This document shows positions 9,108 through 48,851 of a stretch of 48,902 bases of DNA, in pieces; the stretch's first letter is position 1; every line of letters begins with the position of its first letter. Both the position numbers and the translations under genes were made by a program. The stretch spans positions 1-48,902 of the forward strand of contig MQRK01212705.1 in NCBI GenBank assembly GCA_001938485.1, written 5' to 3'. The notes beneath the pieces are model-generated. The model worked only from the letters and a program-made list of their open reading frames with translations, made no database searches and was not told the DNA's origin. The DNA is from Girardia tigrina (taxonomy: Eukaryota).

Positions 9108-9713
9108 TCTTATAAAAGCCCAAGTCACTCANNNNNNNNNNNNNNNNNNNNNNNNNNNNNNNNNNNNNNNNNNNNNNNNNNNNNNNNNNNNNNNNNNNNN
9201 NNNNNNNNNNNNNNNNNNNNNNNNNNNNNNNNNNNNNNNNNNNNNNNNNNNNNNNNNNNNNNNNNNNNNNNNNNNNNNNNNNNNNNNNNNNNNNNNNNNN
9301 NNNNNNNNNNNNNNNNNNNNNNNNNNNNNNNNNNNNNNNNNNNNNNNNNNNNNNNNNNNNNNNNNNNNNNNNNNNNNNNNNNNNNNNNNNNNNNNNNNNN
9401 NNNNNNNNNNNNNNNNNNNNNNNNNNNNNNNNNNNNATTTATTATGAAAAATTCTGTATTTAATGTGGAAAAATATCAATTTATTATGAAAAATTCTGTA
9501 TTTAATATGAAAAACATCAATTTATTATGAAAAAATCTGTATTTAATATGAAAAATATCAATTTATTATGAAAAATTATGTTATTATTTCAAAAATTTAC
9601 CTTACAGCATTAGTGAGGCAGTGAGGCAGGCAGTGAGTGACTTGGGCTTTTATAATATAAAAAAAATTGAACCCCCGGCAAGAGAGGGCCGCGAAGCGGG
9701 CCGAGCGCGCTAG
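9108..9713 (+). mobile_element. Non-autonomous Helitron-like element spanning an assembly gap
   Basis: 5' A|TC start (tcttataaaagcccaagtcactca). The 3' GC-rich hairpin ggccgcgaagcgggcc is followed by CTAG|T. Internal ~41-bp tandem repeats; the interior is partly N. Confidence 0.6.
9438..9580. repeat. ~41-bp tandem repeat, 3+ copies, abutting the N gap
   Basis: Unit atttattatgaaaaattctgtatttaatatgaaaaatatca. Confidence 0.9.
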
Positions 9714-14501: not shown

Positions 14502-16021
14502 TAGGGATGTACCAGTTTTCGGCTCCGGCAAAATTCTACCAGTTTTGATGCTGGTTTTTTGCTCAATGTTTAAAAGAATTAAATAATGTTCTCATAAAAA
14601 CAAGTGATTATAAAATAAGATTTAAAAAAATCATGCGTTTACAGATGCAGTTTTACAGATTTCATCATGGAAGCGACATCTTATAGTAATTTTGATTCCA
14701 CTTTGAATTGATTTTATGTTTTTAAAAATTCTTATTAAAGATATACACAAGTCCTCACTAATATTTTATAGCTTCGCGTTGTTCGAAGGATCCGCTTCAA
14801 CAGATTTTCTTTGCTTTAATGGTGCTACTTCTCAAATAAATTGCTCAAACAATTTATAGTCGGACCTCTATGTAACGAAGTGGAAGGGACCAAAAAATAC
14901 TTCGTTATAAAGAGATAAAATTAAAGCTAAAATTCTTCGTTGGTACAGGACAAATCCTTTGTTAAATAGATGTTTCATTAAAGAGAGATTCGATTGTATT
15001 ACTTTTGCACCATTTTTATTCCTCCGAATTCTGCATTAAGTCACCGGTGGGCTGTTTTGGTAAAATTATAATTTCGGGCATTTCTATTAAGCGTTTGTTT
15101 ATAAACGAACCAGTTATCGAGCGGAAACATCGCTCTTCACCGAGTACCATTTCGATTGAACATATCTAAATAAGTAGTCTCAAAGGAGTTAAGTATTAAA
15201 ACTAACTCGGGTAATAAATGATTGTTGATAGAGTGAAAACAGCAAAAGCGGAATTTTTCAGTCAATGAATCGCCGTTTGGTTTTTTAGAGAGTTAACTAC
15301 TGTTATTCATTGCAACTATTCTTAATTCCAGTTTCAAGTTCCGCTGTTTAACTGCAGAAGGTAGAAATACTAGTGATAAGACAAGTTCATTCTTTACATA
15401 AGAGCAATAGTTAACAAATAATTACAAAGAGCCATCAAACAAAAAAGCAAAGCCTCTCTTATAATACCCCATGGACCTTTTTAGATGAAAGCCTCCCCAT
15501 CACTCTAGCTGATAACGAACAGTCAACATCAATTAAGACAGAGCCATCGACTTATATAACTGAATGCATCCTGGTAAAGGAGATCCTTTCCTCTGGTGGC
15601 AATCAAACCAACACATACTTTATACTATGGCACATTTTGATCTTGCTCCTCCTTATACAAGCATTCTATTAGAAAGAGTATTTATCACAGATAAATACAT
15701 TATTACAGATCATCAATCTCGACTTCTAGAAAATACAGAAAAACTTATCTTTTTAAAATTTCATTTATATTTGCTTGATTGCTGGACTGATGACTTTAGA
15801 AAGGCGCTTCTTTTTGACTTATCGATTTATTTAGATGTAATGCGTTTCTTACCATTATTGTATTTAGTATGACGTAATGTATTTAATCTTTGTTTGGTTT
15901 CGTTTTGTTCAACTTTTTTCAATTTTCGCAAAACCGACACAGGCTCCAACTCCGGCTGAATTTAACCAAAATTCTATCCGTCACTGGCCGGATTTCAAAA
16001 AAGTAAACTATTTCATTCCTA
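14502..16021 (+). mobile_element. Decayed hAT (Ac/ZBED-like) element
   Basis: Ends TAGGGATG / CATTCCTA; 8-bp flanks ccatttaa/gtatttaa (imperfect). ORF 15564.. DPFLWWQSN...PYTSILLERVF...SRLLENTEKLIFLK is a hAT dimerisation domain. Confidence 0.75.
14857..14996. mobile_element. pogo/Tigger-like MITE nested in the hAT element
   Basis: TA|tagtcggacctctatgtaacgaa ... ttcattaaagagagattcgattg|TA; imperfect TIRs. Confidence 0.55.
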
Positions 16022-16699: not shown

Positions 16700-17394
16700 A
16701 TGACGGTACGCCCCTTTCTTGGTTCACAATCTTCGAATTCTTGTTCAACAAAAATCACAATTCTTCGACAATGGCCAAGTATCTCCTCATCAATCTCCCT
16801 TCTGAACTCCTCCAGAAACTCGCATCCAGCGCTGTCAAATGTCTCGATTCTTCTCAGCCATATGAAGAGCTGAAAGATGTTATTTTCAGTCATTACAGTC
16901 CATCTCAATTAGAAATATTTAAAAAATATTTCCAACCTCAAACACTGGGCAATACCTCAGCATCAAAATTCCTCTCAAGAACCATCGCTGAATTCAATTC
17001 CCTTCAACCCGGCAGTCCTCCAAATCCAGAACTCGTCAAAGAATTATTCCTATCCGCGATGCCAGCCCACATCCGTCCAATGTTATTAAGCTCCCATAAA
17101 TCAGACCCTACTGATTTGGCCAAAATTGCTGATCGAGTTCTCCAGGGATCAACAAATTCAAGTTCCAGAAATATACAGAGTACCGACCTTTGTTCTACAG
17201 TCGAAGAGCTGTCTAAACAAGTATCTTTGTTAACGACCCTTTTAACTCAGAATTCAGCAGACAATTCTTATGTCAACCGGCCAGATTCACGTTCCCTTAT
17301 CAGAAGATCGTCCCAACGGAAAAATGTTTTACTTTGCTCGTACCATAACCAGTTTGCCAACAAAGCAAAAAAATGTTGTATCGGCTGTGGTTGA
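16700..17394 (+). pseudogene. gag: Gypsy gag-like ORF
   Basis: WFTIFEFLF...YEELKDVIF...ELVKELFLSAMP...LAKIADRV and the C-terminal LCSYHNQFANKAKKCCIGC (CxYHxxFGxxAxKC-type motif). Confidence 0.8.
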
Positions 17395-17471
17395 TCTAAA
17401 TCTGATTCCGATTCTATTCTCCGTGATCCAGTCTGCGTCTTCCATAATCGCTTCGGTTCAAAGGCCATCAG

Positions 17472-20400
17472 ATGTTTGCAAAGATGCACATTTTCAAAAA
17501 ACGAGTAGAGTCTCTAGGCTCTCAAACCCGTTTAGATGACCTTACATTAGGCTTATTCATGCTCAACGCTCAATTTCAATCCGATTCCGGTCTCCAAACC
17601 AACAGCATTGATTTCCTAATCGACTCCGGTTCGTGCATTTATATCATTCCCACGAGAATGGCACCAACACGCTCTCCGAAAACCACTCTCCGTGCCGCCA
17701 ACGGTTCACCAATCCAGACCTATGGAACCATCTCACTTCAATTCAAGCTCTCTGGATTTCAACAAGATTTTCAGTGGATCTTCACCGTTACCAACACAGT
17801 CCACCCACTTCTTGGAGCCGATTTCTTAAGCAGTTATGGTTTTTTGGTTGATTGTAGGTCTCCTAAAATTATTGAAGCTCATTCGTTTTCCAAAATTTCG
17901 ATCCCATCGACTTCTTTATCGTCAATATTATCGAGTTGTTCAAAGACGGCCGCTACACAATCATTCATCAAAGATTCTGCTCCCAACTGTTTGTCCCGCG
18001 ATCCGGCTTTCTTTCCAGTTCATCCAGTGGTCCATCGAATAATCACCAAGCCATGTCATTCAGTCAGGCACAAGCGACGAGAACTTCCAGTTAAATCCAG
18101 ATCGGCAGTTCAAGAAGAATTTCGACAATTAGAAAAAGATGGTATTATCCGTCGTTCTTCTTCCCCATGGGCCTCAGCTCTTCATGTTGTCGAAAAACCG
18201 GACAAATCATTTCGCCCATGTGGAGATTATCGAGCGTTAAATTCCATCACAGTGCATGATTCATATCCCATGCCCAATGATCACTGACATTGTTCATCGA
18301 CTCATCGGTTCAAAAGTATTTTCAAAAATTGATTTGAAAAAAGCTTTTCACCAGATCCCGGTCGCAGATGAGGACATAGAGAAAACTGCAATAATCACCC
18401 TATTTTGCTTATTTAAATTTCTTCGAATGTCTTTTGGTCTCAGAAATGCAGCTCAATCATTCCAGCGCTACATTGATACGGTTACAGCTGACCTCGATGG
18501 TGTTTTTGTTTATCTGGACGACATTCTCATTGCATCAAATAATGAAGATCAACATTTTCATACTTTGTGTTTGCTTTTCTCTAGATTGCATGAAAACAAT
18601 CTCCAAATTAATATTAAAAAATGTATTTTTTTTCAGTCTTCAGTGAAGTTTCTTGGATTCCAAATATATTCCGACTGCATTGCTCCTATTCCAGATCGGA
18701 TAAAAGCAATTTCGTAACTCACATTACCAGTCACAGTATCCCAGCTCAGATGTTTTATCGGCATGGTAAAATTCTATCATCGATTCTTACCACATGCTTC
18801 TGAAATTCTTGCACCGCTGGTTTCTTTTTCATCTCTCAAACTCAATTGGACTGAAGATTTAACTTCCCGATTTTCCGAAATTCAGAAAAAAATTTCCGAT
18901 TGTCCAACTCTTATGTTCTATGACCCATCATTACAGTTACAGTTAATCTGCGCGACGCATCCGATATTGCAATAGGATCTGCATTGCATCATAAGAGAGA
19001 CAGATCCTTGAACCTATTGAATTCTTCTCTCGAAAACTTTTAGACACTGAAACCCGATATTCAGCATTCCATCGAGAACTCCTAGCAAATCATGACGCTG
19101 TTTCACATTTTTTACATTTTCTTTCAGACCGCCAATTCGAGATATTAACCGATCACAAGCCGCTGGTGCACCTTATCCAAATGAAAAACCCGTCACCTCG
19201 ACAACATCGACAGATTTTATATTTATCACAATTTGATTTTGCAGTTTCACATCTTCCCGGCAAACAAAATGTTGTTGCTGATTTTTTTATCCAGAAATCT
19301 AGTTTCAGCAATATCACTTCTCCCAGATTAAGCTCTCGAGTTTCTTCAGTTTGGAAATCTTTCCAAAGAAGAGCTCGCTGATTTCCCAAATCATTATACC
19401 AACACTGATGGTATAACTTATGAATCTGTGGATCTCGGTGTCCGAAGAATCATCGTTCCTACCGGTGTATGCAGGCACATCTTCGAAACATTCTACAAAT
19501 TGCACCATCCGGGTCGAAACGCAACATTCGAGCTGATTCATACTCGTTTTGTCTGGTCAAACATCAGACGTGATATCAAAATATGGTGCCAAGATTGTAT
19601 GTACCGATTGCCAAAAGCAGAAAGTAACGCGGCATATTAAACCACCAGTTATCAGATTTCCAACAGGCAATCGTTTTGAGATTGTACATTTAGACATTGT
19701 CGGTCCACTACCACCTTCAAATGGATGCTCTTATATTTTAACAATGATCGATCGGAAAACAAGATGGCCTGAAGCAGTTCCAATCTCCTCAATTTCTGCT
19801 GAAAATGTTGCTAGACATTTTGTCAACACTTGGATTCCTCGGTATGGTGTACCTTCTCAAGTTATCACGGATCAAGGTCGGCAATTCGAAAGTAATTTAT
19901 TTCAGGCTCTTGCAAAACGTCTTGGATTCAAACACGTCCATACAACTTCGTATCACTCACAATCAAACGGNNNNNNNNNNNNTTTTCATCGAACCTTAAA
20001 GACTTCTCTACGTTGTTTAGGTACCTCTTCAAACAGGCATGATTCTCTTCCACTCGTGTTATTAGGTTGGTGAAATACTTTTCATTCATCTACAGGGACT
20101 TCTCCTAGTGTTATGTTATTCGGAGCTGGAACAGCTTTCCCTGATGAGCTTTTTAGAGAAACGATTAATACTGATCTCGAAGCTTTACATGCCGTCAGAA
20201 AACACTTCCTCTCCTCTGATACAAACCCATCTTTTGGCAACTCTGCCCAGAAATTAACTTATCTGCCAAGTTCAATGCTCTCAGCCAAGTATGTCTGGAT
20301 CCGTGAAAAAGATACTCATCATATGAAGCCTCGTTATACTGGACCATTTCCGGTTATTTCTATTAAAGGTAATGTTGCAAAAATTAAAATTCAGGATGCC

Positions 20401-20526
20401 GAACAAACCATCAATTTCGAGCGTCTGAAGCCAGCTTTTGGTTTTTCCCAAGATGAGAACCACCCCCAACTCCGTTCTTCTCCAAAGGAGCTATGTGGTG
20501 ATGTCATTCCTCACCACATTCAGTAA
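17472..20526 (+). pseudogene. pol: Gypsy pol (protease, RT, RNase H, integrase), frameshifted
   Basis: FLIDSGS protease; [21 protein letters not shown] and YLDDILI RT; TDHKPL RNase H; HHPG..CxxC, HLDIVGPLP and TDQGRQFES integrase; PRYTGPF (GPY/F). Confidence 0.93.
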
Positions 20527-20782
20527 TATTGAACTCCAATGATGTCAAATCTCCTGACATCACTAGAGTTCAAATTCTGGTGATTTCATATGTCATGACA
20601 TCACCGGAATGGGCAATTACAATGTCAATTTCAATTGCATCAACTGACCCAGGGGCATATTATATAATATTAGATAATATTGCCTTAATATAAAAGGGAA
20701 GATTTCAAAGTTTAATTTGTTATTGTACCCAATCAATATTTAATTTAAATATATTTTATTAGACGAATTTGTGTTCTTTACA
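20494..20782 (+). repeat. 3' LTR
   Basis: Starts TGTGG after the purine-rich aaaggag and ends TTTACA; contains a TATAAAA box. Confidence 0.92.
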
Positions 20783-21393
20783 CTCGTCATATTAGTTTTC
20801 ACAGCAAATTTTATCGGTCATTTTGAATTTGCCGGTTTTTATTCATTTATCTTTCAAAAGTAAAAAAACAACTTTTAAAAGAACTTTTTTTTGTAAACGA
20901 TGAAGAACTGATTTTTATTGCTGGATTGTTAACGCAGTTGTGGTGAGGTGACAAACGAAATTGCAGCGGTTGGTTGTTGACTTCTTCTTGATGCAGGTAG
21001 ACGTCAAAATAGAAAAATCTGTTGAATAATGTCAAACAACAGATTTATTATAAGTGATTTTTGTTCTCAATAAAGAAAATTTGAACAAAACTTTTAATAC
21101 ATCTCATTCTTTTTGCAATAAACATAATTTGTATTTCTTTGTTTAAATGTTTATATTTTGTAACTAAAGACATCGCAAATATTTGAAAGGTCGTAACCTT
21201 AGATTTTCTAGCATATTTTAATTATATATTTATTTTGTCGTAAGTTTTATGAAATTTTTATCTAATTTTATTATTTTCAGATATAATTTAAATAATAAAT
21301 TTTTTAATTAATCAAATAATTTCCATAAATTATATTTGTATTTAGAACGATTGTTTCATATTTGAGGAGTGAAAAAATATAAATAAAATCGAG

Positions 21394-24135
21394 ATGGGGT
21401 TATTTTAGGAAATGAAATATAAAATGCTTTAATAATAGTCGCAGTAATTTCGCGTCCTTCTCTAAGTACGTGACGAACGGCAGTACGAACAGAGTGAGAC
21501 TTTTTATGAGAAAGAAGTTCGTAGACGAAGTTATAGATCAAAATTTGAGTAAAAACATCGAAGTAAATAAATAAATGTTTTGATGTTTGGTTAGGGAAAA
21601 GAGCGATTCATTTTGCTTGTGAGTATGGATACTTTGATATTGTGCAATTATTGATTGAAAAGAAATGCGATATCGAATGCGAAGATCGAGATGTAAATAT
21701 TGATTTGATTGGTCCGCGATTAAAGATGCATGCAGGCACTCAGGCCAATCCATTATGCCTCGAGATACGGACATGCGGAGATCGTGAAATTATTGATTGA
21801 AAACAAGTGTAAAATGGAATGTGAAGAAAAATATGTAATGATTTGTTGGTGGTAAAGTCCCGATTAACGATTGCAGGGATTAAGGCCAATCCACTTTTCC
21901 TGCTTGAGTGGATTCGATGGAATTGTGAAATTGTTGATGGAGAATGAGTGCAGTCTCGAGTGTGAAGATAAAGATGTTGATTGTTTTTTATTATTAAAGA
22001 ATTAAATCGGCAGTTAGGGTTTACGACCGATTCATTATGCGTGCATGGAAGGATCTGCTGGCGTCACGAGGGCATTGATTGAGAACCACTGCGACATTGA
22101 GAGTCAAGACGGAGATGTTTGGAATTTATTTGTTTAGTGAGATGTGTAATATGTTATAGGGGTGGACGGCCATGCATTATCTTTCAATGCGAGGATTTGT
22201 GGAGGTTGTGCGATTACTAGTCGAGAACAATTGTAACATTGAATGTGAAGACAAAGATGTTAATTATATATTCCATTTGATTAAAACAAATTACCGATTT
22301 ATTTAGGGATTCAGACCGATTCATTTGGCTTGCTTAAGTGGTCACATCGATATCGTTACACTTCTTATCGAGAACAATTGCAATTTAGAATGTGAAATGA
22401 ATAATGTTTTATTTTGTTTAAATAATCAAATAAAATAACTTGAAACTAGGGATTAAGACCAATTCATTTTGCGGCAATGAGCGGTGATGAGAACATTGTG
22501 AGATTATTGATTGAAAAGAATTGTGATATCGAATGCGGCAATCGTTACGTAATGACGCATATTGTTTGATAATGTTAAAAATTCGTGATCCTAGGGCTGG
22601 AGGCCGGTTCTTTACGCCATCGATCTTGGATTCATCGATATTTTGAGTCTTCTTCTCGAACATAAATGTGATTTGGAATGTCAGGATGATGACGTAATGT
22701 GGCTTTTACTGAATATGTGATAAACGACCATTATTAGGGATTGAGACCGATCCATTTTGCTTGCATGTCTGGTTATTATGACATCGTTCAGTTGTTCATT
22801 GATAACCACTACAATATCGAATGCGAAGATCAAAATGTTTTTCGGTTTATTTCATTTTAGATTAACGTGCAATATGAGCAGGGGTGGAGACCGGTCCATT
22901 TCGCTGCTAGGGAGGGTCGTTTGAAGATAGTGGAATTACTGGCGGAGAAAGGCTGCAACATCGAATGCGAAATAAGAGAAGTAATTTTTGTTGCTAGATG
23001 ACAATAAAAGATGAATTATAAATTATTGAAAGGGATATCGACCGATTCACTTGGCACGTATCAATAGAAATACCAGTATTGTGAGGGTATTGATTGATAA
23101 AGGTGTCGATATTGAATGTGAAAATATATACGTAATTTAAGAAACGAATAAACTGGTTTTAGTGGCATAACTGAATCTTGTAGGGACAAAGACCAGTCCA
23201 TCTCGCCTGTGAACAAGGCTTTGTCGATATATTGGTATTGCTGATGGACAATAATTGCAGTATTGACTGCCGGGATAAAGAAGTTCGCTTTATTGTCCTA
23301 AGTTAATATAAGCGCTCGTTTTGTCAGGGCTTTCGACCGATTCATTACGCCGCTAAAAATGGACATTTCGATACGTTCAAATTATTGATGGAAAGAAACG
23401 TCGATATCGAATGTGAAGTTTTATGCGTAATTATTTATCGATAAATGTCTTAAATAACGGAGGTCTTTAGAAATGGAGACTGATTCATATTGTTTGCAGG
23501 GAGGGACACATGAATATGGTGCAGCTTATGGTCGAGAAGAACAGCAACGTCGAATGGATGGAGGAATCTGTGAGTAAAGGTTGATTATATCGTCCATGAT
23601 ATTCGATACAGGGATTGAGACCGATACATTTTGCTTGCAAATATGGATACTTTAACATTGTCAAGTTATTAATTTCCAGGAAGATCGACATAAATTGTAA
23701 AGATCGATACGTAGATATGTTTGAATACACTCCAGAATTTTGAAATGTCAAATGTTCAGGGACTGACGCCGCTCCATTTCGCTTGTGTTAATGGCCGCCT
23801 AAATGTCAGCAAACTGTTGATCGAGAGTAATGCAAATATCGAATGCGAAGACGCAAATGTAAATGACGCGATTTACATCGAATAGTAATCTATTTCTAAT
23901 ATTTGAGGGTTGGAGATCAATTCATTTTGCTTGTCACGATGGCTACCTGGATATCGCCAAACTGTTGATCGAGCATAACTGTGTGACCAATTGCCAGGCC
24001 AACAACGTCTTTTATATTTTATAATGACAATATTAAATCTTCAATGTTCAGGGACTGACTCCGGTCGATCTGGCCTTAGCTAACCACCATGACCATATAT
24101 CGAGATTGTTGGCAGCAAAAGATGACCCCCAATGA
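21394..24135 (+). CDS. Ankyrin-repeat protein, ~624 aa, 20 exons, one repeat per exon, predicted N-myristoylated
   Basis: Exons: 21394-21398, 21445-21548, 21595-21692, 21736-21834, 21877-21975, 22018-22116, 22160-22258, 22307-22405, 22450-22548, 22595-22693, 22738-22836, 22882-22980, 23033-23131, 23184-23282, 23328-23426, 23471-23569, 23612-23710, 23760-23858, 23908-24006, 24052-24135. All introns are GT-AG, 42-52 nt. The joined frame is open from MGNFASFSK to ...AAKDDPQ*. Repeat consensus GxRPIHFACxxGxxDIVxLLIExxCxIECEDxx. The first two exons are less certain. Confidence 0.92.
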
Positions 24136-24289
24136 GATGTTTGCCTCTCCCATGCCGATTGGAACATTTCATTGATATAAATATTTATCTTTGTTTTTCC
24201 TCTCGGATTTGATAATGTCACGGTATTGTGAACAACAGAGACAACTGAAAAGCTAAAGAAATCATTAGCGATGAACACGTACAATAATA

Positions 24290-25600
24290 CAGGAAGGTAA
24301 ATAAGGAGGTCCGAAGGTTACTGAGGAATGCAGAAGAGGATTGGACAGCAGAGCAAACAAAATTGACAGAAAGCTGTTTTAAAAGGAACAATTTTATAGA
24401 AGCGTGTAAGATAATTAAGAAAATTTCAGAGACCCGAAGAGAACCAGGTGTAATGGAGAATCAAGATGGTAATATATTAACATGGAGTACAGAAATCGTT
24501 GACAGATGGAACGAATATTGCAGCTAAATTACAACTTCAAAGCGGGGGTCGACAGGAGAGTTGTCTCTAGAGATTATGAGGATCAGCAATTCAAAATTTA
24601 AAGGCTGCCATAAAATATGTCAAGATGAACAAATGTGAAGAATAAGCGACTATGTAAGACATATTTAAAAAGTTATCACGAGCCTTTATGTAGACGCAAA
24701 GACTAAACTGTTGACAAGCGAGTAATTTTGCTACTAGTTTAAATCCTCAGTAGGATTAAGACGAAACAGCATTCTATTACAACACTGTTCAATCTTTTCC
24801 TTGAGAAACTTGTAATGGAAGCAATAGACAACCTAAAATATTTTGGGATAAGCTGTGGAGGAATGAAAGAAACAAACCTACAATTTACTTATGTCAGAGA
24901 CCTAATTGTAATAGACAATACCGAAATTCAGGAACTTACGGACAGACTGCACAAAGTATTCGAGAAAGTTGTTATGGAAAACGAAAGCAACAAAACAAAA
25001 ATAATGGTTTCAGCAAACCGCAGCAACAAAGTCAAATTGGAAATTGGCATTGAAGGGGAGAAGCTAGAACAACTTAAAGGTTTTTGATAACAACGCTCCA
25101 CCATGATTGAGAATGGAGGAAAGGAAGAATAAACCCGAAACGCGATTTACATTATAACAAGTGCAATTAGGCTTAGTTCAGTTGTTAACATGAAAGAAAT
25201 CAAACACATGAGCAGAATAAAGATCACTAAGGCTATTGTCTGGGAAGTACTTGAGTTTGATACTTACACAGAAGAGCATGGACATACTTAAAACGTTTGA
25301 AATGAGGTGCTACATTAGAATACTGAGGATCAGGTTAAAAGAAAACAAAACAAACGACTTTGTCTAGAAAAGGAGTTACTGAAAAACTAGTGAAAGATCG
25401 GAATTGATCGAAGATGCCATCAGGAGAAGGAAGCTGAAATACTATATGCATCAAATGAGGAGAAAAGCTTTATCAAATGTTATGATTGAAGGAAGAATGG
25501 AAGGAAAAACGCCAAAGAGACAATTATTTAAAAGAACGGAGCGCATGGAAAATGGGAGATTTGAGAAAAGCGGCTGTCATCGAGAGCAGAGACAAATACA
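24290..25600 (+). mobile_element. Decayed non-LTR retrotransposon (RTE-like) RT fragment
   Basis: Remnants IVDRWNEYC, VGLRRN..TLFNLFLE, LQFTYVRDLIV (YADD-like), NKTKIMV, FEMRCY.RILRI and IRRRKLKYYMH..IEGRMEGK; many stops. Confidence 0.8.
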
Positions 25601-40800: not shown

Positions 40801-41380
40801 ATTGGTTTTCTTAATACATATTAAATTACCATTTAACGAAATCGAAAATCACATTTTAGGATTGCAAATTGGTAAAGCTTTTGGAAGTACGTCTTATGTC
40901 CGCTGGGAGTTATAGGATTAACAATAAGTATTTTTTTAAATGACGATAAGATTTTTTAAAGGTATGTGTATGAATGATTGAAAATCAATTGATCGAAAAT
41001 TGAAAATGGAGAATGTCGTAGGAACATTAATTTTTCAATCACGAAATTTTGTAGGTATTTTTAAATATTTGCATGACAGAATCTGGAAGTATAAAAATGC
41101 ACAAATTACACTAACAAGCTTCCTTACGCGCAGATCAATGCCACTATAACCCCTCATCGACTGTGCTCTTGGATTCGTTTACAGAGATGACATGACGCAA
41201 TAAAATTGTACAAAAATAACAAAATCAATCGTCTTATTGTGACCGTAAAACCGCCGATATAAATCTTAATCATAAAATATTATGTTTTTTTAATTAACCT
41301 AATCATTTGCTTGTTTTTGAAACAAAAAAGATGTATTGTAAAATTGTGTTTATTGATATAAGAAAGCAACTCGCGCTTAC

Positions 41381-42038
41381 TAAAATCCATCCATTTTGAT
41401 CGACAATCCACCCGACCAATATTTGAGCCACGATTCTGTCAAACGTCTCAATTATCTTGGGAATGGTGTCCCATTTGCCATTCCTGGCGCAGTCAACAGC
41501 CAAACTTGAGGCCACACAAAGCACAGATATTATCTTTCCCCAATAGATGTTTTTATCAGTCGATCCGGAATTATAAATCAAAGCATTAGCGAACTGGAAA
41601 AAGGCTTCACTGATTTTATCATGTTCCCAACTGATGTTGATTCCCATCTGAGAGGAAACATTCTTATACAAGTCAGGATACATGAATTCCAGCTGAGCCC
41701 CAATGTCTTGGAATTCATTGCAGGAAATGCTAATTGCCTCCGGGGTCTGGGAACCAGAACTAGATCCCAACATGAAATTTGAAATCGCATTGACCCCATG
41801 AAACGCTAAAACGCTTCCAAAAGAATGTTTCTTTAAGTCGGAGTTCCTGGCAAGGAATGAATGTTATATCAAGCCGATCCATCCATCACATTTACCTGAC
41901 ATTGTCCATTTTGATTAAATTTAACCTTCTGAGTTTCTTTGAAATGAAATCCTTGCAAATCTGGTGTCCCTGAGTTATCACTTCATCTGGGGTAGGAGGA
42001 TCTTTCGGTTTCTGAATGAGAATTTGACGATACCACAT
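41381..42038 (-). CDS. BOK: Bcl-2 family protein, BOK/Debcl-like (exons 42038-41896, 41846-41381; terminal exon uncertain, possibly ~41265-41155)
   Basis: BH4-like PPTPDEVITQGHQICKDFISKKLRR, BH3 FQDIGAQLEFMYPDLYKNVSSQM, BH1 IYWGKIISVLCVASSLAVDC (BOK has ITWGKVVS...LAVDC), BH2 GWIVDQNGW; 49-nt GT-AG intron. Start codon uncertain. Confidence 0.85.
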
Positions 42039-47958: not shown

Positions 47959-48851
47959 TCATGCTTCGGACTTGTGAAGTCCTGCAATCCTTTTTCTTAG
48001 GTGGGTCGGTAACTTCTGAAGACATGGCTTACATATTGGTTTACGGTCGATTTTATAAATTTTGGACCTATGTATCAAAAATATAAAATTGCGCTAAATC
48101 AATCGTGACGTACGTATCATCGAGCAACATGTCACATGCAGAACATCGGAAGTGATCTACACAATAGACTTTCTTGAGGAATTCGACAGACTGTTTACCA
48201 ACGTCTTTGTTACAGTATTCACAGAGCTTGGTTGACATCATTTGGAAATGAAGTTCACAATAAACTTCTTTGTTGAGTACGAAATAGCGAGTTCCAAGGA
48301 ATGGCTTGCTGCAAAAGCTGCATACAAAGTGTTCCACATGATAGGCTTTGCCGAGGGCGTAGATAACTCTTTCTTCGACTGGTCGTCTAAATAACCGATA
48401 AGACAAGTATCAAAATAAATGTACGCTACTTGCATGCTGCGCAAATGGGAATACCCATTTTATCGAAACAACGTAAGCAATAGAAGTTGCCGTCTTTTTC
48501 TCTAAAATTTTTGTCAAGTTCATTCTGGCAATTTGTACATTTGAAATGATAAGGATGATAAAATTCTCCATCGCATTTCAGATATTCCTGTCCTCTTATT
48601 CCTGCCTTGCATTTGTGACAAATGTACACCGCAGGCACTTGATTCTTTAAGAGTGCATGGCACTTTTGACAGTATGGACTACAAAACACTCAATATACTT
48701 TTACGTTGATGTAAAAGTTTTAACTTGTTTTCATATTTCTTGAATGTCGAACTCCCGGCCAATGACTCCCTACAATTGGTACAGTTGAAGCATTCGGCGT
48801 GCCAGGTGTGGTCGATGGCCTTAATAATCTTTCCTCTTAAGATAAACTGGT
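47959..48851 (-). CDS. LIMS1: PINCH / LIM and senescent cell antigen-like protein, LIM2-LIM5 (exons 48851-48725, 48678-48430, 48386-48114, 48067-47959; 5' part outside the window)
   Basis: Spliced product contains [68 protein letters not shown]..KPFLG and KPICKPCLQKLPTHLRKRI, collinear with PINCH; introns of 46, 43 and 46 nt. Confidence 0.93.

What the first reader, a model, noticed from the sequence alone, without database searches (positions are those of the whole stretch)
21394..24135. Hidden ankyrin 'cassette array': 17 repeat exons with phase-0 junctions, a candidate natural DARPin-like diversifiable receptor
Seen: a ~145-nt periodicity invisible in the ORF track. Sixteen exons are exactly 99 nt (plus a 98-nt first one), each encodes one 33-aa ankyrin repeat, and each is followed by a 42-52-nt intron at the same phase-0 position; N-cap-like and C-cap-like exons flank the array and no exon contains a stop. 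Known: repeat-aligned introns occur in vertebrate ankyrins and some LRR genes, so the layout alone is not unprecedented. Inference: any subset of the sixteen 99-nt exons can be skipped, duplicated or exchanged without a frameshift, which would allow combinatorial binding surfaces (immune-receptor or parasite-effector-like diversification) from a 2.7-kb locus surrounded by transposons.
Basis: partly seen in the sequence, partly recalled or inferred. Interest (0 to 1): 0.85.

Follow-up and report, generated by a model that had tools for sequence, protein, structure and literature searches.

The report
Planarian one-exon-per-repeat ankyrin gene family
This is a real, expressed flatworm gene for a protein made only of 17 ankyrin repeats, one per small exon; it is spliced in one fixed form, but it belongs to a large, apparently undescribed family whose younger members reshuffle their repeats in the DNA and change fastest at the binding surface, as pathogen-recognition proteins do.

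Summary
Observation confirmed. This is a 20-exon gene (21394-24135) for a 624-aa ankyrin-only protein: sixteen 99-nt exons, one 98-nt exon, and phase-0 introns of 42-52 nt after each repeat exon. The host is a triclad planarian. RNA contigs from two studies span all exons in order, and a third run covers part; no splice-site skip was seen. Repeat number and order match in other isolates (pN/pS about 0.3), so this copy is an old, stable member and not shown to be a splice-cassette array. The family is the real finding: 885 strict-motif repeats genome-wide (control 0), roughly 100-200 contigs, arrays of 4 to about 40 repeats. Young paralogues have near-identical 145-nt units. At the codons randomised in DARPin libraries they show 0.97 amino-acid changes per site, against 0.41 synonymous, 0.22 intron and 0.28 framework; recombination signals fall inside exons. 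Relatives from other organisms share the architecture; two carry a TIR domain. Best reading: intracellular recognition proteins diversified at DNA level, like brown-algal ROCO/NB-ARC-TPR and fungal NLR repeats. Immune function is inferred, not shown. The scan noted this family before on another contig (s1-703968).

The parts
21394..21398 (+). Coding part of exon 1 (start codon plus two bases of Gly2). The 5' UTR extends upstream; there is an in-frame stop shortly before the ATG.
   Evidence: RNA joint 21397/8 to 21444/5 in X6 and X7
21445..21548 (+). Exon 2, N-cap (degenerate half-repeat). The protein begins MGNFAS, which fits the MGxxxS N-myristoylation consensus (inferred).
   Evidence: N-cap aligns to the N-terminus of outside relative P0153; no other match in the genome
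21595..21692 (+). Exon 3, 98 nt, ankyrin repeat 1 (phase-1 start, phase-0 end)
21736..24006 (+). Exons 4-19: sixteen 99-nt phase-0/0 exons, one ankyrin repeat each, starting at 21736, 21877, 22018, 22160, 22307, 22450, 22595, 22738, 22882, 23033, 23184, 23328, 23471, 23612, 23760 and 23908; introns 42-52 nt
24052..24135 (+). Exon 20 coding part: C-cap repeat and stop codon; no effector domain follows
   Evidence: aligns to the last ankyrin cap of P0140
24136..24699 (+). 3' UTR (at least this far in RNA contig X7 record 10), running into a decayed dispersed repeat
   Evidence: table 8
16741..20526 (+). Upstream broken LTR-retrotransposon (weak gag and protease hits, RT, integrase); neighbour, not part of the gene
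24240..25600 (+). Decayed high-copy dispersed repeat, 70-75% identical to many genomic copies, LINE-like by eye; neighbour

Best explanation
The gene encodes a cytoplasmic, possibly N-myristoylated and so membrane-tethered, 624-aa ankyrin solenoid (N-cap, 17 repeats, C-cap, no catalytic or signalling domain), spliced as one dominant isoform (shown at contig level). It is an old, fixed member of a large planarian family. The exon-plus-intron unit (about 145 nt) expands by unequal crossing-over because the intron is phase 0 (inferred from repeat-number range and identical duplicated units). Young members are homogenised by conversion while the residues of the concave binding face diversify and are recombined inside and between units (shown statistically, with assembly caveats). 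The most likely role of the family is intracellular recognition of fast-changing foreign proteins. Some relatives signal through an attached TIR domain; ankyrin-only members such as this one would act as sensors, adaptors or decoys (inferred). This copy left homogenisation long ago and now keeps one fixed binding surface under purifying selection.
For: One isoform: X6 record 9 and X7 record 10 each have 1682 nt between exon 2 and exon 20, exactly 98+16x99. Family: 885 strict-motif hits versus 0 for the reversed control; 303 of 325 examined repeats are intact AG|99|GT/GC exons; arrays of 4 to about 40. Homogenisation: 145-nt unit with 46-nt intron, within-locus unit distance 0.076 versus between-locus 0.079 in five paralogues with 88-97% identical flanks; identical exons within arrays. 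Selection: at the six DARPin-randomised codons (register checked), minimum amino-acid changes per site 0.97 versus synonymous 0.41, intron 0.22, framework 0.28; position-permutation p below 0.02 in 10 of 11 single-array tests. Recombination: linkage decays with distance inside the unit in all five young arrays, p 0.012 or lower. Outside relatives P0140 and P0153 are ANK-TIR proteins, with per-repeat profile scores 81-83 versus at most 67 for other proteins fetched up to then, and start MGxxxS. L034 is genomic DNA from another sample with the same phase-0 introns. Precedent: PMC3341825, PMC11378527, PMC13449251.
Against: No functional or infection-expression data. Omega above 1 against synonymous sites alone is significant in only 4 of 11 single-array tests (values 1.0-2.0 in the weaker ones), so part of the signal could be relaxed constraint. 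The five young loci exchange units and are not independent, so the pooled p-value is overstated. A short-read draft can make chimeric units and allelic duplicates. No TIR or RING domain was found next to any fetched array. The source organism of the ANK-TIR transcripts is unknown. The window gene itself shows no diversification. The MG start is not predicted in the paralogues examined.
Confidence: 0.6

Rival explanations
1. One reading: this locus makes many binding surfaces by alternative skipping of its symmetric exons.
For: All 16 exons are phase 0/0 with standard splice sites. Alternative splicing of one-repeat exons is reported for brown-algal ROCO genes (PMC11378527).
Against: Two independent RNA contigs carry all exons in order and no listed joint skips an exon at splice sites; the one non-adjacent listed joint has CA..AG ends and a 35-nt side, consistent with a paralogue. 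Introns of 42-52 nt leave little room for regulation (inference). The repeats are highly diverged, so new neighbours may not stack well (inference). Caveat: contigs drop rare variants and 11 weaker joints were not printed.
Confidence: 0.07
2. The family diversifies in an internal conflict or self/non-self system (anti-transposon or anti-selfish-element proteins, allorecognition, gamete recognition) and not against microbes.
For: The same selection and concerted-evolution signature. Fungal repeats with high internal conservation act in allorecognition (PMC13449251). The genome is very rich in transposons.
Against: TIR-bearing relatives point to innate-immune signalling. No signal peptide or membrane helix, so no surface role.
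Confidence: 0.15
3. Largely neutral repeat turnover: the arrays behave like coding minisatellites, the framework is kept by folding, surface codons are simply unconstrained, and this gene is an ordinary scaffold with one endogenous partner.
For: Omega near 1 in several arrays (L020, L021, L023). Some broken units and truncated arrays occur. The window gene is under purifying selection.
Against: Amino-acid change at binding-face codons exceeds both the synonymous and the intron rate in the youngest arrays (L011, L014, L015). About 93% of units are intact.
Confidence: 0.15
4. The young-array signals are assembly artefacts.
For: Fragmented assembly (255,254 contigs), N-gaps inside arrays, duplicate contigs.
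Against: Amino-acid variety at single codons cannot arise from mis-joining. RNA contigs of paralogues are present. The same architecture occurs in an unrelated sample (L034).
Confidence: 0.03

Closest known systems
Ectocarpus / brown-algal ROCO (LRR) and NB-ARC-TPR candidate immune receptors (PMC3341825, PMC11378527)
   Same: One repeat per exon, repeat shuffling, gene birth and death, diversifying selection on the repeats
   Different: Ankyrin instead of LRR or TPR; an animal; no ROC-COR or NB-ARC domain; no alternative splicing seen for this gene; recombination signals also inside exons
Fungal NLR sensor domains with high internal conservation (Podospora NWD/HET WD40 repeats; PMC13449251)
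   Same: Near-identical repeats with a few hypervariable binding residues, unequal crossing-over, exchange between paralogues
   Different: No NACHT or NB-ARC domain; an intron between every repeat; the window gene itself is no longer internally conserved
DARPins (engineered; PMC8683736; PDB 5LE2 and others)
   Same: N-cap, 33-aa modules and C-cap; the variable codons in young paralogues match the randomised library positions
   Different: Natural; 17 repeats; an extra variable position 7; Cys-rich RPIH..C..IECE signature
Canonical ankyrins (ANK1-3), TRPA1/NOMPC, latrotoxin ankyrin regions
   Same: Long ankyrin solenoid. Repeat-aligned introns in vertebrate ankyrins are recalled, not tested here.
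   Different: No ZU5 or death domain, channel or toxin domain; only generic repeat similarity; no orthology
Schistosome micro-exon genes (own knowledge)
   Same: Flatworm genes with symmetric small exons
   Different: Those are secreted, use exons under about 36 nt and are alternatively spliced; this gene is cytoplasmic, has 99-nt exons and one isoform seen

Membership tests
Ankyrin-repeat proteins (Pfam PF00023 clan) | 33-aa repeats matching the Ank HMM | tested here: met
   six of six repeat exons tested above the cut-off
Canonical ankyrin adaptors (ANK1-3/unc-44) | 24 repeats followed by ZU5-UPA and death domains | tested here: not met
   624-aa ORF ends after the C-cap, confirmed by RNA contigs
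NLR / ROCO repeat receptors | Central NACHT, NB-ARC or ROC-COR domain | tested here: not met
   the whole CDS is accounted for by caps and repeats
Exon-per-repeat shuffling receptors (ROCO/NB-ARC-TPR-like mode of evolution) | Each repeat on one symmetric exon | tested here: met
Exon-per-repeat shuffling receptors (ROCO/NB-ARC-TPR-like mode of evolution) | Recent repeat duplication or exchange and diversifying selection | tested here: inconclusive
   met in young paralogues with assembly and independence caveats; not met in the window gene
Exon-per-repeat shuffling receptors (ROCO/NB-ARC-TPR-like mode of evolution) | Alternative splicing of repeat exons | tested here: inconclusive
   only the full-length form seen, but contigs drop rare isoforms
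ANK-TIR proteins (P0140/P0153 type) | C-terminal TIR domain | tested here: not met
   stop codon at 24135; TIR hits in this genome are about 30% identical and on other contigs than the arrays seen
N-myristoylated proteins | Met-Gly start with a small residue at position 6, and the modification itself | tested here: inconclusive
   motif present and shared with P0140 and P0153; the modification is not testable here
Immune receptors (functional) | Binds a pathogen-derived ligand or is needed for defence | not testable with these tools
   no functional data

The most novel reading that the evidence does not exclude
Planarians, for which no TLR orthologues are described (PMC7958881), carry a germline-diversified repertoire of hundreds of natural DARPin-like intracellular receptors, continually rebuilt by recombination of one-repeat exon units and coupled to TIR or other effector modules. 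This would be a new animal innate-recognition family convergent with plant and fungal NLRs, and this gene would be one of its fixed, membrane-tethered members.
Probability: 0.3. Interest if true: 0.85.

Novelty: new variant of a known kind. Interest (0 to 1): 0.55.

Why it matters
How planarians recognise pathogens is open: a review lists about 20 TIR proteins but no TLR-type sensors and never mentions ankyrins (PMC7958881). A large family with an arms-race signature gives a candidate that can be tested directly by RNAi in an easily handled animal. It would extend the one-repeat-per-exon diversifying receptor design from algae and fungi to ankyrins in animals, and it shows natural variation concentrating on the same positions that protein engineers randomise in DARPins. 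The window gene itself is the quiet member.

Tried and rejected
Alternative-splicing cassette model: no support in RNA contigs. Recent internal duplication in this gene: none, minimum exon distance 0.32. Extra domains: none in the gene; a RING regex over all fetched loci found none; RING and TIR hits in the genome were not on array contigs I had seen (compared by eye only). Toxin or secreted effector: no signal peptide or hydrophobic stretch; latrotoxin hits are generic repeat similarity. Named orthologue: three protein searches, the representative search and the Atlas gave only generic ankyrins plus two unnamed ANK-TIR proteins; these databases hold few planarian proteins and are limited by query length. 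Literature: no paper on this family in the searchable library. A first script timed out.

Full report
Observation. The array is real. Sixteen stop-free AG|99|GT exons follow each other from 21736 to 24006; elsewhere in the window such hits are scattered (21 on +, 25 on -) and never arrayed. Every repeat exon tested is a Pfam ankyrin repeat; mean column identity is 58% and the consensus is GxRPIHxACxxGxxxIVxLLIExNCxIECEDxx. The complete model has 20 exons, a 1875-nt CDS and 624 aa with no internal stop. Intron 1 is phase 2, intron 2 phase 1, and introns 3-19 are phase 0 and 42-52 nt. An in-frame stop lies shortly upstream of the ATG. The protein begins MGNFAS, an MGxxxS myristoylation consensus (own knowledge of the motif), and has no signal peptide or membrane helix.

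Organism. A Bcl-2-family ORF in the window is 66% identical to Schmidtea mediterranea Bok-2. The genome is 1.43 Gb in 255,254 contigs. It is a triclad planarian. Girardia is suggested by my recollection of that assembly size and by an earlier scan note, and was not tested here.

Expression and splicing. Contigs of three runs are spliced at the predicted sites and the DNA run is not. X6 record 9 and X7 record 10, from different studies, each span exon 2 to exon 20 with exactly 98+16x99 nt between, so all repeats are present in order. The only non-adjacent listed joint has CA..AG ends and a 35-nt side; the other odd joints lie inside exons with inserted letters and fit paralogous transcripts. 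Contigs drop rare forms and 11 weaker joints were not printed, so rare skipping is not excluded. DNA contigs of another sample cover the gene without gaps apart from two short unbridged stretches. The listed coding differences in other isolates are 8 non-synonymous and 7 synonymous, pN/pS about 0.3 (p about 0.02; the list was truncated to the best supported), and only one non-synonymous change is at a DARPin-type position. The 16 exons differ from each other by 32-56%. The N-cap exon finds no second copy in the genome. This gene is therefore old, single-copy and stable.

The family. DNA and profile searches hit many other contigs. A strict codon pattern gives 885 matches against 0 for the reversed control. 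About two thirds of examined repeats fit that pattern, so the total is probably above 1000 repeats. The first 100 matches lie on 26 contigs, suggesting roughly 100-200 contigs, some of them allelic (estimate). In 20 fetched loci plus the window, 303 of 325 repeats are intact 99-nt exons with the intron at the same position. Arrays hold 4 to about 40 repeats; where the ends are visible they have a similar N-cap and a short end, with no extra domain detected.

Diversification in young paralogues. L011 and L013-L016 consist of 145-nt units with a 46-nt intron. Units are as alike between loci as within (0.079 versus 0.076) although the flanks are 88-97% identical, which points to exchange between paralogues. 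Variation concentrates at codons 2, 7, 9-11 and 31-33. I fixed the test set in advance as the six DARPin-randomised positions (2, 10, 11, 30, 32, 33; from own knowledge, register checked against PDB DARPins). Pairwise pN there is 0.20-0.33, against pS 0.05-0.12 and intron divergence 0.02-0.06. A count of minimum distinct changes per codon, which does not depend on a tree, gives 0.97 per site at those codons, 0.41 synonymous, 0.22 intron and 0.28 framework. Against synonymous sites alone this is significant in L011, L014, L015 and L025/26 but not in seven other arrays, and the loci are not independent. Linkage decays with distance inside the unit and minimum-recombination intervals fall within exons, so binding-face blocks are recombined at DNA level below the exon scale. 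Chimeric assembly across the constant middle of the exon could inflate the long-range part of that signal.

Outside relatives. Among the proteins fetched up, P0140 and P0153 stand apart by per-repeat score and share the N-cap, C-cap and MGxxxS start. Both end in a TIR domain and come from poly(A)-ending contigs of one JGI sample of unknown organism. L034, from another JGI sample, is AT-rich genomic DNA with the same phase-0 introns, near-identical units and, by my reading, an MG mini-exon with a phase-2 intron. The architecture is thus older than this species. TIR domains in this genome were not found on the array contigs I saw.

Mechanism. Shown: gene structure, one dominant isoform, family size, homogenisation, excess change at binding-face codons. 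Inferred: unequal crossing-over and conversion as the engine, helped by phase-0 introns that keep any unit gain or loss in frame; membrane tethering; recognition of foreign proteins as the selective cause. Confidence in the evolutionary description is about 0.85; in the defence function about 0.6.

Comparison. [quoted passage not shown] No description of the planarian family was found in the searchable literature. The scan reached a similar family-level reading on another contig (s1-703968) and noted a RING-bearing member (s1-694824). My reading was recorded before I saw those notes, and they are not independent evidence.

Limits.

Verdict. Observation confirmed; interpretation partly supported; new variant of a known kind; interest 0.55.

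Noticed in passing
window 41303-41773 (-): Bcl-2-family ORF, 66% identical to Schmidtea mediterranea Bok-2; used to place the organism
   Followed up: partly
window 48068-48406 (-): ORF with two LIM domains (Pfam PF00412), probably an exon of a LIM protein gene
   Followed up: no
window 16741-20526 (+): Broken LTR retrotransposon (weak gag and protease hits, RT, integrase); very high-copy repeat at about 20600-20800 next to it
   Followed up: partly
window 15564-15872 (+): hAT transposase dimerisation-domain fragment (just under the Pfam cut-off)
   Followed up: no
window 24136-24700 (+): The gene's long 3' UTR in run X7 runs into a decayed high-copy repeat; the X6 contig ends near 24195, so there may be two polyadenylation sites
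   Followed up: no
G000:C199710 near 4657 (+): A family repeat lying in a 541-aa open frame: possible intronless (retro)copy; could not be fetched
   Followed up: no
L031, L032 (P0140, P0153): Unnamed ANK-TIR proteins from a JGI sample with this family's repeat signature, caps and MGxxxS start; source organism unknown
   Followed up: partly
L034 1062-1710: Genomic fragment from another JGI sample with the same exon-per-repeat layout and near-identical units
   Followed up: partly
G000 contigs (for example C241716, C176777, C235860): At least a dozen TIR-domain matches lying in open frames of about 530-660 aa: a possible expanded single-exon TIR family in this planarian
   Followed up: no
L018 / L019: Probable alleles of one gene, both with an intron of about 1.06 kb in mid-array; four exons identical
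   Followed up: partly
window 9132-9436: N gap flanked by an AT-rich 41-nt tandem repeat (9437-9597); left as is
   Followed up: no
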